From assembly GCA_044892525.1 (NCBI GenBank), contig CM097885.1, positions 82,770,001 through 82,834,000 on the forward strand: a stretch of 64,000 nucleotides of DNA, given 5' to 3'. Under the pieces are notes generated by a model. It was not told where the DNA came from and searched no databases. It saw only the letters and a list, made by a program, of their open reading frames with translations. Each line of letters begins with the position of its first letter. Position 1 is the first letter of the stretch. This DNA is from Schmidtea polychroa (lineage: Eukaryota). Positions 39,721-44,559 of this stretch are shown piece after piece. Made by a program: the position numbers and the translations under genes.

Positions 39721-41074
39721 CTAAAAACATCACAACATAGCTCCGCTTAAGGAATGTGGTGATGATCGAAACCGAGGAGAATTCAGCAGGGCCGTCTTTG
39801 GAATTTTGGTGGCCAACGCAACATTATTTATGGGGGAAAAAATGTCAGAAAAAAATTCGATTTTTTAAATTATTATTAAATACACACATTTATACATTTC
39901 CGTACAGAAATTGAATTTACTTACCATTACTTATGCATTAATTCATATTTATTCAAGTACCATCGAATGANNNNNNNNNNNNNNNNNNNNNNNNNNNNNN
40001 NNNNNNNNNNNNNNNNNNNNNNNNNNNNNNNNNNNNNNNNNNNNNNNNNNNNNNNNNNNNNNNNNNNNNNNNNNNNNNNNNNNNNNNNNNNNNNNNNNNN
40101 NAATACAAATTTCTTGCATGTATGATTTATAGACATGTAAATAATGTCTTAATTTCTGAGGGGTTCAGAAATTTGTGACATAGAGTGACTTTTGTTGTAT
40201 ATATGTTGACTTCAAAACGACACTAATATTGTATTGTGACGTTGCTATCATGACGTCATCCGTGACTTTTTAACCGTCAACTGATAAGTACCAAAAATAT
40301 GCCTACCTATCTCTGGCTACAAACGATTTGGACTGTTTAAAACAGGTTCTATACGTTTGCTATTACACATGCGTATATTACCATGGAACGGTTTTGGCGG
40401 GGAAGTAGCTGGAATTTTATATGGACCAGGAGAGGCCGGAATAGTAAATTTGGGACGAATTTGATCAATCATGTCAGTGAAGAATTAACGGAATGCGTTA
40501 GCAAGAAAAGATGTATCAGGCTGGTCAGGAAGAGAATATGTGGCGGTTCTTTTTCAGGAATTCTTTTCAGTATTTTTTTGACGTATCATTATCACTGCTT
40601 ATCAATATTCATTATTTTGTTAAATATCTGAATCTATTAATTGTAGAATTTAGTTTTAAAATTTATTTCTGCATGCATATTTAAAATCCAGCAGTGACGG
40701 CTATTCGCGTAAAACACAGAATAAATGCAACTATTATAAATGTTAATGAAAATCAAAGTAAAATGAAGAAAGACTACATAATAATTTTAAAAATTAATAA
40801 CAAAAGTGTTTTCATGCGACACGAAAATTCATCAAACGCAGTTAACATGTTAATTTGATCCCCATTGTAAATTCACCATGTGCTCCTTGATTTATGTTTA
40901 ATTTTTTCTGTTTAATTTTTACAGTTTCCTTTTATTCAATATAATTTAAACCGTACTCTTTACTAATCCTTATTGCTGCAACCGTAAAATCATGAGTAAA
41001 GAATCCCTTATCATTGGAATTAATAATAATAATAATAATAATATAAACAATTAATAAATAATTTAATTAATTAG

Positions 41075-41333: not shown

Positions 41334-41432
41334 GTGGGAAAATTTTTCAAATTTCCAATTAATTTTGTGAAACATTGTTTGTAAAATATAACATAATTTC
41401 TATGTAACTAAACTTATCACCCTGAATAACTA

Positions 41433-44082
41433 CAGTCTTCCACCGAATATAGTACGCGCGCGTTATATTCGAGTTTTCTGAAATTATTTTATATTTGAAA
41501 TATTTTAGTTTTTTTCAAATTAAATGCGCACTCAAATATAACACGCGCGTACTATATTCGAAATTCAATTTTAGAGTTAAATAATAAAAGTTTCATACTT
41601 TTATTTTGTAATTTTATTATTAATTCATAGTTCAAATAATATCACATAGTTCAAATCAGTTCATTTAATTAAATAAAATCAAAATCAATTCAAAATAAAA
41701 TTAAATTAAATTAATATTCATAAATTAAAAAAAAGGTAATTAAAATTTATAATTGTAAGCCGAAAAAGTCCTTGTGCTTAATAATATGAATATTTTTTAC
41801 TGTTGAGTTAGACCCATAAATAAAGCTCGACACTTCACATGCTTCCTCATCTAAAGTTGTGACTTGAATTTTCCAATTATTTATAATAGAAACTGAAAAA
41901 ATTTCAATATTGGTTCCAGTATATTCACCATTTTGAAGACAGTTTCTTTCAGAATCATCCAGCAATTCTTTGCAGACGGCATATTTGTCAATAAATTTCA
42001 AAACTTTACGAGTAAATTTAGGAAGCCAACTTTCGAAATCACTTTGAGTTTCATTACTTGCTTTCCAAATACAATGAAAAAAACTCGTGCGGATGTCAAG
42101 AGGCCAGTGCCATTCAGAATCATTATCCAAGAAAAAATTATTGTTTTGTTTCAAAATCTGTCCATAACTTGATTTCCACTCTTCAAATTTAAATGTTGAA
42201 TCATCGAAAAATTTTCTTAATGGCTCATGCAAGTTATGAATGTCGAATTTATCCTTTGGTACCAGTCCGCAAACTTTAAAAGCTTTTTGCACAGTTTCGT
42301 TGGACAAAGAGTCGATCCATTCTAGAATCCACTTGGAAACGATAGAATAATTAGGTGATTTAATATTTCCAGCCTTTGTTCGTAATGTGGAATTATCATC
42401 TTCTAAGGCATCTGCAAGATATTTATCATAATTTGTAGAATAATGTTGCTGGAAACTTCTATTAAGTGAGACATCCTCTGGTTGCAGCAATCCGGTCATA
42501 TTTGGTGGTATTAGCATGAAATGAATGTTATGTTTCGCATATTTCTGTTTCTCGTTTTCTGATTCAAAAAACTTAACATGTGTACCATAGGAGTCCATCA
42601 AAATAAGAACAGGTTCTCTACTGAAAGCTGTTTGTCTTCTCGTTAGAATTACATCAGAAATGAAGTTTTTTAAAATGTTTTCGTTCCACATGCCTGTACG
42701 ATTTACCTCAACTAAACATCGCTGTTCTACAGTAGGTTTATTAACAAGTCCTGAAAAGAGTAGATGAGGTTTTAAAACCTTACCTACACCAGTAATTGCG
42801 TAGGTCAAAGTAAAACGTTTGTGCGACGTTGACGATTTACGCAAAAAGACTTCTCGCGTAGCTTTTGAAGTTATCGTACTTTTTGGCTCACATTCAAAGT
42901 ACCGTGGGACTTGATCGAAGTTGATTATATTTTCAGTTTTTACATTCATTTTCGCAACGAAACCTTGAAAATTCTGAATGAAACTTCTACAAATTTCATC
43001 TACATTGTCCGGAATCTTCTTTGCAGTGGTAAATCGTCGTGAAGTTAAATTGTTTCGCTTTTTGAAGCGGTCAACCCATCCGGCTGATGCTTGAAATTTG
43101 TTTAACTCTTCATTACCGCCATGTGCTATAATATCATTTCGAACTGACAAAGCTTTTAATTGAATATATTTTTCTTTTACACGGATTCCTTTCTCATTTC
43201 GTAACAAAATCCACTGTAGAACTTTGTTTTCGATTTCTTCATATTCCATTTGCCTTCCACCACCAGCTAATCTTCTGCATATACGGGTACAAATATTTAC
43301 ATCACTTACCGCCTTAAGAAGATTCTCTTTTTTGTTTTTCCAACCACGTAATACCGATTCATTAATTCCATGTAGTTTAGCAATTGCACGACAACTCTTT
43401 CCTGGTTCACCTGGTTTAATTTCATTTAATATATCAACCTTTTGCTTGATTGTATAATTTTTTCTGTTTGAAAATGTTTTATTGCTGCTCATCGTATGGT
43501 GTTTTAATAAATTATAAGTTATGTACTTATTTAAAGAAATTTTATTTTAAACAAAACCTGATCTAATTAGAACAAATATTTAGATATATGTGTCACCAAA
43601 TTTCTAATGAAACTAAACGTAAACAAAAGAATTACATATTTTATATTTTCGCGAAAATTAAGCAAGGCCTACTTAGATTTGTATTTTTGAATTTACAAGT
43701 GAAGTTTTTAAATTGAATCAAAAATTCTATTTTGAATAGTTTACAATACATATATACATACATACTTTTATTGAGTATGATTATTCTACATAATCATTTT
43801 GATTGAGAAATTAAAATTGCGTGTACACTATAAACACAAGTCATTTGATTTCTATTTTCTAATAATATTATACGTATGTATATATATAATATAGAAACAT
43901 AAAAATGTTTTAACGTTAAAAAAACAAAAAAGCAAGGGTTACTTGAGAATAAGAAAAAATTTTTAGAAGAATTTGTTTGTTAAAATTTATAGAAAAATTA
44001 CCTGCAAATTTTACTTTAGTTAGAAGTTACATTATAAAATTCGAATATAGTACGCGCGCGTACTATATTCGGTGGAAGACTG
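41433..44082 (-). mobile_element. Full-length pogo-type DNA transposon, 2650 bp, in calpain intron 8
   Basis: 31-bp identical TIRs CAGTCTTCCACCGAATATAGTACGCGCGCGT; TA TSD at 41431-41432 and 44083-44084. Confidence 0.95.
41747..43492 (-). CDS. Intact pogo-like transposase (HTH, CENP-B HTH, DDD) with OTU-like C-terminal extension, 581 aa
   Basis: RKNYTIKQKV (HTH); FQASAGWVDRFKKR (CENP-B); NFDQVP / LMDSYGTH / LQPEDV triad with 39 residues between D2 and D3; no stops. Confidence 0.92.
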   Translation of the reverse strand: MSSNKTFSNRKNYTIKQKVDILNEIKPGEPGKSCRAIAKLHGINESVLRGWKNKKENLLKAVSDVNICTRICRRLAGGGRQMEYEEIENKVLQWILLRNEKGIRVKEKYIQLKALSVRNDIIAHGGNEELNKFQASAGWVDRFKKRNNLTSRRFTTAKKIPDNVDEICRSFIQNFQGFVAKMNVKTENIINFDQVPRYFECEPKSTITSKATREVFLRKSSTSHKRFTLTYAITGVGKVLKPHLLFSGLVNKPTVEQRCLVEVNRTGMWNENILKNFISDVILTRRQTAFSREPVLILMDSYGTHVKFFESENEKQKYAKHNIHFMLIPPNMTGLLQPEDVSLNRSFQQHYSTNYDKYLADALEDDNSTLRTKAGNIKSPNYSIVSKWILEWIDSLSNETVQKAFKVCGLVPKDKFDIHNLHEPLRKFFDDSTFKFEEWKSSYGQILKQNNNFFLDNDSEWHWPLDIRTSFFHCIWKASNETQSDFESWLPKFTRKVLKFIDKYAVCKELLDDSERNCLQNGEYTGTNIEIFSVSIINNWKIQVTTLDEEACEVSSFIYGSNSTVKNIHIIKHKDFFGLQL

Positions 44083-44559
44083 TAGATATATAGATTTAAG
44101 GCTCACTCAACTTAAACAATTCAACTAAAAGCAAATCTACTAAAACTCAATTCAACTAATTATAATTTGACTAAAGAAATACAACTTATCTATATGAACC
44201 TACCTGGGGTGTGGGTGTCAGGAGAAAAATAATTAAAAAATTTTAAATCGGAAAATTAAAAAATAAAATTTTAAAATCGAAATTGTTTTAAAATAATATT
44301 ATTATTTATATAGAAATTATTCAATTATTTATTTAAGTTTTAATTTATACAGTTTTTATGAATGATTGATAATTGAAATTTTATTGCCGATATTAAATAA
44401 TTAGTAATTGTCTCAAAAATATATTGTTTTAATAATAATAATTAAAAGATTATAATTATTTTATTTACAACTTGTACTGAAATAAATTTTGGAATTATAA
44501 GTGAAGAATTAAATGCTGTAATAGCCTGTAATAATCCAATTTATGCAAAATAATAATTA

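What the first reader, a model, noticed from the sequence alone, without database searches (positions are those of the whole stretch)
41747..42110. Pogo transposase fused to a catalytically degenerate OTU-like domain
Seen: about 120 aa beyond the usual DDD end: WPLDIRTSFFHCIWKA...FTRKVLKFI...LQNGEYTGTNIEIFSVS...WKIQV...FIYG...NIHIIKHKDFFGL, in frame within an intact element. Known: the OTU deubiquitinase pattern is D..NCLFRA..LR..V.Y....G.WGG..EI.A...I.V....I.L.Y..HY. Inference: an OTU fold with Cys to Ser and His to Phe, i.e. a pseudo-DUB (possible ubiquitin binder) carried by a pogo element. OTU or Ulp1 cargo is known in some other transposon superfamilies; I do not know it for pogo.
Basis: partly seen in the sequence, partly recalled or inferred. 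Interest (0 to 1): 0.72.

Follow-up and report, generated by a model that had tools for sequence, protein, structure and literature searches.

The report
Pogo transposase with dead OTU domain
A young, multi-copy pogo "cut-and-paste" transposon encodes a transposase whose last ~130 amino acids fold like an OTU deubiquitinase but lack all three catalytic residues, and this inactive domain is conserved across a whole clade of pogo transposases, which has not been described for this superfamily.

Summary

- **Element and ORF.** Window 41747-43492 (-) is an intact 581-aa pogo transposase with CENP-B_N and Tc5 HTH domains and a DDE_1 domain (D193/D300/D340). It sits in a 2,650-bp element (41433-44082) with terminal inverted repeats and a TA duplication. 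The genome holds at least 10 full-length copies at 97-99% identity.
- **Fold of the tail.** Residues ~452-581 have no Pfam or PDB sequence match. An AlphaFold2 model (pLDDT 90) matches only OTU domains: all of the Foldseek top 50, and Z 12.5 to OTUD3 in an exhaustive VIA-align search. A profile-profile comparison with OTUD3 gives 93% probability, E 3.5e-7.
- **Catalytic positions.** That alignment puts Ser470 at the catalytic Cys, Phe576 at the His and Ile467 at the Asp.
- **Family.** In 66 relatives (down to ~33% identity over the transposase) the nucleophile column is Ser or Ala and never Cys, and no conserved His exists.
- **Selection.** The domain is under purifying selection (dN/dS 0.29).
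- **Function.** The domain is a retained pseudo-protease. A role as a ubiquitin or partner-binding module is inferred, not shown; the ubiquitin docking test gave no verdict.
- **Prior knowledge.** OTU domains are known in Ginger1 and Helitron-like elements. No report for pogo was found.
- **Earlier scan note.** The scan had already noted a sibling copy (s1-250011).

The parts
41433..44082 (-). Complete autonomous pogo element (2,650 bp), flanked by TA target-site duplications at 41431-41432 and 44083-44084
   Evidence: Homology with 9 other full-length copies (98.6-99.4% identity) begins and ends here. The ends read TA|CAGTC...GACTG|TA.
41433..41468 (.). Left terminal inverted repeat with a GC-rich subterminal palindrome; the palindrome recurs at 41530-41560
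   Evidence: the repeat finder I1 (43 nt, 93% complementary) and I5
44047..44082 (.). Right terminal inverted repeat
   Evidence: the repeat finder I1 and I25
41747..43492 (-). Transposase ORF, 581 aa plus stop codon, with no internal stops
43313..43465 (-). CENP-B_N type helix-turn-helix (residues 10-60)
   Evidence: Pfam PF04218, E 2.2e-7
43037..43243 (-). Tc5/CENP-B second helix-turn-helix (residues 84-152)
   Evidence: Pfam PF03221, E 1.2e-14
42263..42928 (-). DDE_1 catalytic core (residues ~189-410) with D193, D300 and D340 (DD39D spacing)
   Evidence: Pfam PF03184, E 8e-11. All three Asp are invariant in 32 full-length relatives.
42140..42238 (-). Helical linker (residues ~419-451) with a low-confidence hinge at 445-450
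   Evidence: Full-length AF2 model: helices 423-430 and 436-443, pLDDT below 50 at 445-450
41750..42139 (-). OTU-fold pseudo-protease domain (residues ~452-581)
   Evidence: AF2 model pLDDT 90. OTU-only structural matches. hhalign 93% to an OTUD3 profile.
42083..42085 (-). Ser470 codon, at the position of the OTU catalytic cysteine
   Evidence: hhalign column match of D-G-N-C with I-R-T-S. Family column: S 42, A 13, C 0 of 66.
41765..41767 (-). Phe576 codon, at the position of the OTU catalytic histidine
   Evidence: Extended hhalign aligns F-F with H-Y. The family column is Y/F/I with no conserved His.

Best explanation
The last ~130 residues of this pogo transposase are a real but very divergent OTU-fold (papain-like deubiquitinase) domain. 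It was fused to the transposase in the ancestor of a whole pogo clade and has lost the Cys/His/Asp triad in every member seen. It is therefore a pseudo-protease kept for a non-catalytic job. Shown here: the fold, the substitutions (Ser470, Phe576, Ile467), the conservation across 66 relatives, and purifying selection. Inferred: the domain acts as a binding module tethered by a flexible hinge to the DNA-cutting core. My preferred guess (about 30%) is recognition of ubiquitin, a ubiquitin-like modifier, or a ubiquitylated chromatin or repair protein, linking transposition to host ubiquitin signalling. A role in transposase self-association or in binding another host partner is about as likely.
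For: - **Pogo identity.** Pfam gives CENP-B_N, HTH_Tnp_Tc5 and DDE_1. The element has TIRs and a TA duplication. The genome holds at least 10 full-length copies at 97-99% identity.
- **Fold.** The AF2 model of the tail has pLDDT 90 and pTM 0.78, and the domain is again confident in the full-length model. The Foldseek PDB top 50 are all OTU. Exhaustive VIA-align gives Z 12.5 to OTUD3, 12.0 to Otu2 and 11.5 to OTUD2/OTUD1, with unrelated folds only from Z below 3.6. The Atlas shape search returns OTU/otubain clusters. The nearest language-model cluster carries PF02338.
- **Sequence.** hhalign of the 25-sequence tail alignment against a 50-sequence OTUD3 profile gives 93% probability and E 3.5e-7. 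The best PDB profile hit is the Erve virus vOTU, 5jze, at E 0.17.
- **Dead triad.** Ser/Ala sit at the Cys column, Tyr/Phe at the His column, and no residue is conserved at the acid position.
- **Constraint.** dN/dS is 0.29 for the OTU core, against 0.17-0.20 for the DDE and HTH parts, versus a 76%-identical relative. G522 is nearly invariant.
- **Linkage.** Among the hits checked, the domain is always C-terminal to pogo HTH/DDE_1.
Against: - Pfam's OTU model does not hit the tail even at E up to 10, and phmmer finds nothing in PDB. Membership therefore rests on profile-profile and predicted-structure evidence.
- Residue equivalences come from hhalign, not from a 3D superposition that I could inspect.
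- No functional evidence exists. The ubiquitin co-folding test gave no verdict.
- No run on record as RNA holds the element.
- Known pseudo-OTUs such as FAM105A are not obligate ubiquitin binders (my own knowledge), so the binding-partner guess is weak.
Confidence: 0.85

Rival explanations
1. The OTU-like domain has nothing to do with ubiquitin any more. It serves as a dimerisation or synapsis domain, or as a scaffold for another host factor, much as the C-terminal dimerisation domain does in the pogo-derived CENP-B.
For: The catalytic cleft residues are replaced by bulky aromatics. The ubiquitin co-fold scored below the mark at 0.24 and 0.00 (not evidence either way). CENP-B gained a C-terminal dimerisation domain (PMC7386202). 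pogo-type transposases act as multimers (general knowledge).
Against: Nothing tested here shows self-association. TEs have repeatedly recruited ubiquitin-system domains, namely OTU/Ulp1 in Ginger1 and OTU/UCH/Ulp1 in Helitron-like elements, which suggests the ubiquitin link is what gets selected.
Confidence: 0.35
2. The domain is still an active hydrolase that uses the conserved Ser470 as a non-canonical nucleophile.
For: Ser occupies the nucleophile column in 42 of 66 relatives and sits in the first turn of the helix, as the OTU Cys does.
Against: 13 of 66 relatives have Ala there. No His or acidic residue is conserved at the general-base positions, and the only nearly invariant residues (G522, E530) match positions that are not catalytic in OTUs.
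Confidence: 0.05
3. The similarity is a modelling artefact or a chance alpha/beta resemblance, and the tail is an unrelated pogo-specific domain.
For: Sequence identity to OTUs is only 10-18%. Pfam OTU is silent.
Against: Four independent lines converge on OTU: hhalign E 3.5e-7, Foldseek, exhaustive VIA-align with a gap from Z 12.5 down to below 3.6 for non-OTU folds, and language-model neighbours. The motif registers also coincide (Cys box, G..E..A.S helix, final beta hairpin).
Confidence: 0.03

Closest known systems
OTUD-type minimal OTU deubiquitinases (OTUD3, OTUD1, OTUD2/Otu1, Otu2/OTUD6; nairovirus vOTU)
   Same: Same compact alpha/beta OTU core. Z is 10-12.5 with rmsd 2.6-3.3 A over ~120-125 residues. 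The order of Cys-box helix, variable-loop helix and C-terminal beta sheet is the same.
   Different: No Cys, His or Asp at the catalytic positions (Ser470, Phe576, Ile467). Not detected by Pfam PF02338. Fused to a DDE transposase.
OTU domains carried by other DNA transposons: Ginger1 transposases (C-terminal OTU or Ulp1) and Helitron-like elements
   Same: A transposon-encoded protein with an OTU domain. In Ginger1 the domain is also at the C-terminus of a DDE-type transposase (PMC2836005; PMC11417382).
   Different: A different superfamily (pogo, of the IS630-Tc1-mariner group). Those OTUs were recognised by ordinary sequence similarity to OTU proteases, whereas this one is undetectable by Pfam and lacks the triad family-wide. 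I did not examine their catalytic residues.
Catalytically inactive OTU proteins (e.g. FAM105A/OTULINL, PDB 6drm)
   Same: An OTU fold without a working triad. 6drm is among the structural matches at Z 8.5.
   Different: FAM105A is a host OTULIN paralogue with a larger OTU. There is no transposase context and no close similarity.
pogo transposases and their domesticated derivatives with added domains (CENP-B dimerisation domain, POGK KRAB, POGZ zinc fingers)
   Same: The pogo HTH plus DDE_1 core with an extra functional domain fused on (PMC7386202).
   Different: Here the extra domain is in an active-looking, multi-copy transposon rather than a host gene, and it has an OTU fold.

Membership tests
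pogo superfamily transposon | N-terminal CENP-B/Tc5-type paired HTH DNA-binding domains | tested here: met
   PF04218 E 2.2e-7 and PF03221 E 1.2e-14
pogo superfamily transposon | DDE_1 catalytic domain with a DDD triad | tested here: met
   PF03184 E 8e-11. D193, D300 and D340 are invariant in 32 relatives.
pogo superfamily transposon | Terminal inverted repeats and a TA target-site duplication | tested here: met
   the ends read CAGTC...GACTG and TA is present on both sides in the copies compared
OTU (ovarian tumour) cysteine protease / deubiquitinase | OTU alpha/beta papain-like fold | tested here: met
   On a predicted model with pLDDT 90: Foldseek top 50 all OTU; VIA-align Z 12.5; Atlas TM 0.60-0.67
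OTU (ovarian tumour) cysteine protease / deubiquitinase | Sequence-profile membership (Pfam PF02338 / PF10275) | tested here: inconclusive
   No Pfam hit even at E up to 10. Profile-profile hhalign to an OTUD3 alignment gives 93% probability and E 3.5e-7.
OTU (ovarian tumour) cysteine protease / deubiquitinase | Catalytic cysteine at the start of the Cys-box helix | tested here: not met
   Ser470 in the window. The column is S 42, A 13, C 0 among 66 relatives.
OTU (ovarian tumour) cysteine protease / deubiquitinase | Catalytic histidine in the C-terminal His box (H-aromatic) | tested here: not met
   Phe576-Phe577 align to H-Y. The family column is Y/F/I.
OTU (ovarian tumour) cysteine protease / deubiquitinase | Acidic third triad residue (Asp at Cys-3, or Asp/Asn after His) | tested here: not met
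   Ile467 aligns to the Asp of D-G-N-C, and that column is variable (G/E/V/S). Gly578 lies two residues after the His position.
OTU (ovarian tumour) cysteine protease / deubiquitinase | Binding or cleavage of ubiquitin or a ubiquitin-like modifier | not testable with these tools
   Co-folding with the genome's own ubiquitin gave no verdict. Biochemistry is needed.

The most novel reading that the evidence does not exclude
The dead OTU domain is a ubiquitin or UBL 'reader' that a whole clade of pogo transposons uses to dock the transposase onto ubiquitylated host proteins (for example modified histones or PCNA at replication or repair sites), or to shield itself from ubiquitin-dependent turnover. 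That would be a transposon-borne pseudo-deubiquitinase that steers where, when or how long the transposase acts.
Probability: 0.25. Interest if true: 0.75.

Novelty: new variant of a known kind. Interest (0 to 1): 0.55.

Why it matters
DNA transposons of unrelated superfamilies have repeatedly picked up ubiquitin- or SUMO-protease domains: Ginger1, Mutator-like elements with Ulp1, and Helitron-like elements. Nobody knows what these domains do for the element. This case adds the pogo superfamily to the list, which the pogo reviews searched here do not mention. Unusually, the domain has been kept under selection after losing its catalytic triad. That separates "binding" from "cleaving" as the selected property. 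It also offers a small, intact, apparently recently active element in which a deletion or point-mutant transposition assay could test the role of ubiquitin-system cargo directly. The case also shows that Pfam-based TE annotation misses such domains.

Tried and rejected
- **Pfam on the tail.** Only a sub-threshold Staphostatin_A hit (E 0.074), taken as noise.
- **phmmer of the tail against PDB sequences.** Nothing.
- **Word-index homology search on residues 440-581.** One relative only, so the exhaustive representative search was used instead.
- **hhalign against a single OTUD3 sequence.** The register was right but the probability was only 5%. It was replaced by a 50-sequence OTUD3 profile.
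- **Complex prediction of the tail with the genome's own ubiquitin (L036:1495-1722:-).** No verdict: scores 0.24 and 0.00 against a mark of 0.34, and the controls were not run. This is neither for nor against binding.
- **Expression.** No holder run is on record as RNA. The runs laid are contigs, so transcription is not shown. Poly-T loose ends at 41793 in one run are unexplained and may be internal priming at an A-run.
- **Differences between near-identical copies in other runs.** Mostly non-synonymous, as expected for neutral decay of inserted copies, so uninformative about selection.
- **Serine-nucleophile idea.** Rejected because 13 of 66 relatives have Ala and no base residue is conserved.
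- **Cys474 as an alternative nucleophile.** Rejected. It aligns with the Ala of the C-L-F-R-A motif and is Ala in about half of the relatives.

Full report
**Observation.** The minus-strand ORF 41747-43492 is open for 581 codons. Pfam finds CENP-B_N (residues 10-60), HTH_Tnp_Tc5 (84-152) and DDE_1 (to residue 405), and nothing credible in the last 175 residues. The tail also has no phmmer match among PDB sequences.

**Element anatomy.** Inverted arms of 43 nt at 93% complementarity lie at 41426-41468 and 44047-44089. Comparison with nine other full-length copies places the ends at TA|CAGTC...GACTG|TA. The element is therefore 41433-44082 (2,650 bp) with a TA duplication. The 781-Mb eukaryotic genome holds at least 10 full-length copies at 97-99% protein identity, several with no stop codon, plus older diverged subfamilies. 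This is a young, probably recently active pogo family. A different pogo family in the same genome has an open frame of 435 aa that matches only residues 1-417. The tail is thus an addition relative to ordinary pogo transposases.

**Is the tail a conserved domain?**
- Diverged, decayed subfamilies in the same genome still align over the tail at 23-57% identity.
- An exhaustive HMMER search of 1.84 billion representative proteins with residues 425-581 found 30 hits at E up to 1e-3, the best at 5e-21.
- Nine of the ten hits scanned with Pfam carry DDE_1 (five also HTH_Tnp_Tc5) upstream of the match.
- A word-index search with the whole protein gave 65 relatives at 33-83% identity.
- An HMM of the tail detects the domain in 74 of 94 collected pogo proteins. 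The 20 without it are all 442 aa or shorter and look truncated.
- Named sources include a liverwort (Riccia sorocarpa) and Phytophthora fragariae. Most of the rest are metagenomic.
- Against a 76%-identical relative whose gene was fetched (L030), dN/dS is 0.29 for the OTU core, 0.17 for the DDE region and 0.20 for the HTH region. The tail is under purifying selection, somewhat more relaxed than the core.

**Fold.**
- AlphaFold2 on a 25-sequence alignment of the tail (A1) gave pLDDT 90 and pTM 0.78. The model has an N-terminal helical lead, a short strand, four to five helices and a four-stranded C-terminal sheet.
- Foldseek against the PDB returned OTU domains only in its top 50: CCHFV and other nairovirus vOTUs, OTUD5/DUBA, OTUD1, OTUD2, OTUD3, Otu1 and Otu2. 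TM scores were 0.5-0.6 and probabilities ~1.0.
- An exhaustive VIA-align search that does not depend on Foldseek gave Z 12.5 (rmsd 2.6 A, 125 residues) to OTUD3 4bou, Z 12.0 to yeast Otu2 and Z 11.5 to OTUD2 and OTUD1. OTU-type proteases fill ranks 1-33, followed by two arterivirus PLP2 proteases. Unrelated folds appear only below Z 3.6.
- The ESM Atlas shape search also returned otubain/OTU clusters. The nearest language-model cluster carries PF02338.
- In a full-length model (pLDDT 82.6) the domain (residues ~452-581) is again confident. A hinge with pLDDT below 50 at 445-450 separates it from the DDE core.

**Sequence-level confirmation and catalytic residues.**
- The A1 profile's best PDB hit is the Erve virus vOTU (5jze, E 0.17). 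It aligns over the G..E..A.S helix and the following strand.
- I took the genome's own OTUD3-like gene (L033, Pfam OTU 58 bits), collected 49 homologues and ran hhalign against A1. The result was 93% probability, E 3.5e-7, over 102 columns.
- That alignment puts the tail's I467-R-T-S470 on the D-G-N-C of the Cys box. The extended alignment puts F576-F577 on the H-Y of the His box.
The Asp at Cys-3 is lost as well.
- Across 66 relatives the nucleophile column is Ser 42, Ala 13 and Cys 0. The His column is Tyr/Phe/Ile, and no alternative His or acid is conserved.
- The conserved Cys474 aligns with the Ala of C-L-F-R-A and is Ala in about half of the relatives.
- The whole clade thus carries a catalytically dead OTU domain. 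The Ala variants argue against a serine-nucleophile enzyme.

**Mechanism.**
- Shown: the fold, the loss of the triad, the linkage to the pogo transposase and the selective constraint.
- Inferred: the domain works as a non-catalytic binding module on a flexible tether.
- I favour recognition of ubiquitin, a UBL or a ubiquitylated partner at about 30%. The reason is that transposons of other superfamilies have repeatedly acquired ubiquitin-system protease domains (PMC2836005; PMC11417382).
- A role in transposase self-association or in binding another partner is about as likely. CENP-B, a pogo derivative, gained a C-terminal dimerisation domain (PMC7386202).
- Co-folding the tail with the genome's own ubiquitin gave no verdict.
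- Expression could not be shown, because no holder run is on record as RNA and only contigs were available.

**Comparison with what is known.** OTU domains are documented at the C-terminus of Ginger1 transposases and in Helitron-like elements. The pogo superfamily review contains no mention of protease or ubiquitin and lists only dimerisation, KRAB and zinc-finger additions in domesticated genes. Full-text searches combining pogo/Tigger/mariner with OTU found no report of such a fusion. I file this as a new variant of a known kind: OTU cargo in a new superfamily, and in a conserved inactive form that Pfam does not detect. The scan's first stage had independently noted a sibling copy (s1-250011). 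That note lies in copy L008.

**Limits.** Residue equivalences rest on profile alignment and a predicted structure, not on an inspected superposition or an experiment. Function is not demonstrated.

Noticed in passing
G000 genome-wide; example L042:3213-7358 (+) = G000:C1:15639712-15643857: More than 100 ubiquitin matches lie as tandem pairs inside long open frames of 400-1400 aa scattered over all chromosomes. One example ORF of 1382 aa contains a dual-specificity phosphatase domain (DSPc), two ubiquitin units and DUF1759. As far as I recall, DUF1759 is typical of BEL/Pao-type retroelement gag proteins. It looks like a repeated element that has captured a phosphatase and di-ubiquitin.
   Followed up: partly
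window 41427-41434 and 44081-44088, and the same junctions in L004, L006, L010: Several copies are flanked by AC-TA on the left and TA-GT on the right. This suggests an extended palindromic target preference (ACTAGT) around the TA duplication.
   Followed up: no
window 41431-44084: Half or more of the element's sampled 31-mers occur in public runs labelled with nine different (coded) organisms. Contigs in three of the four runs laid (each of a different organism) are 98.2-99.7% identical over most of the ORF. This could reflect closely related host species, contamination or recent horizontal transfer; it was not resolved.
   Followed up: partly
window 41444-41474, 41530-41560, 44042-44071: A GC-rich palindrome (core GTACGCGCGCGTAC with AT-rich arms) is repeated subterminally at both ends of the element. 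These are plausibly transposase binding sites.
   Followed up: no
window 41793: In one run (X14, guessed RNA) three contigs carry a loose run of T before 41793. On the minus strand that would be a poly(A) tract starting 15 codons before the stop codon. It may be internal priming at an A-run or a variant subfamily.
   Followed up: no
window 39971-40101: A run of N (assembly gap or masked stretch) lies about 1.3 kb from the element.
   Followed up: no
L033:2242-2544 (+): A 100-aa ORF with a DDE_1-like motif (a pogo/Tc1-type fragment) lies about 200 bp from the genome's OTUD3-like gene. This is probably coincidental.
   Followed up: no
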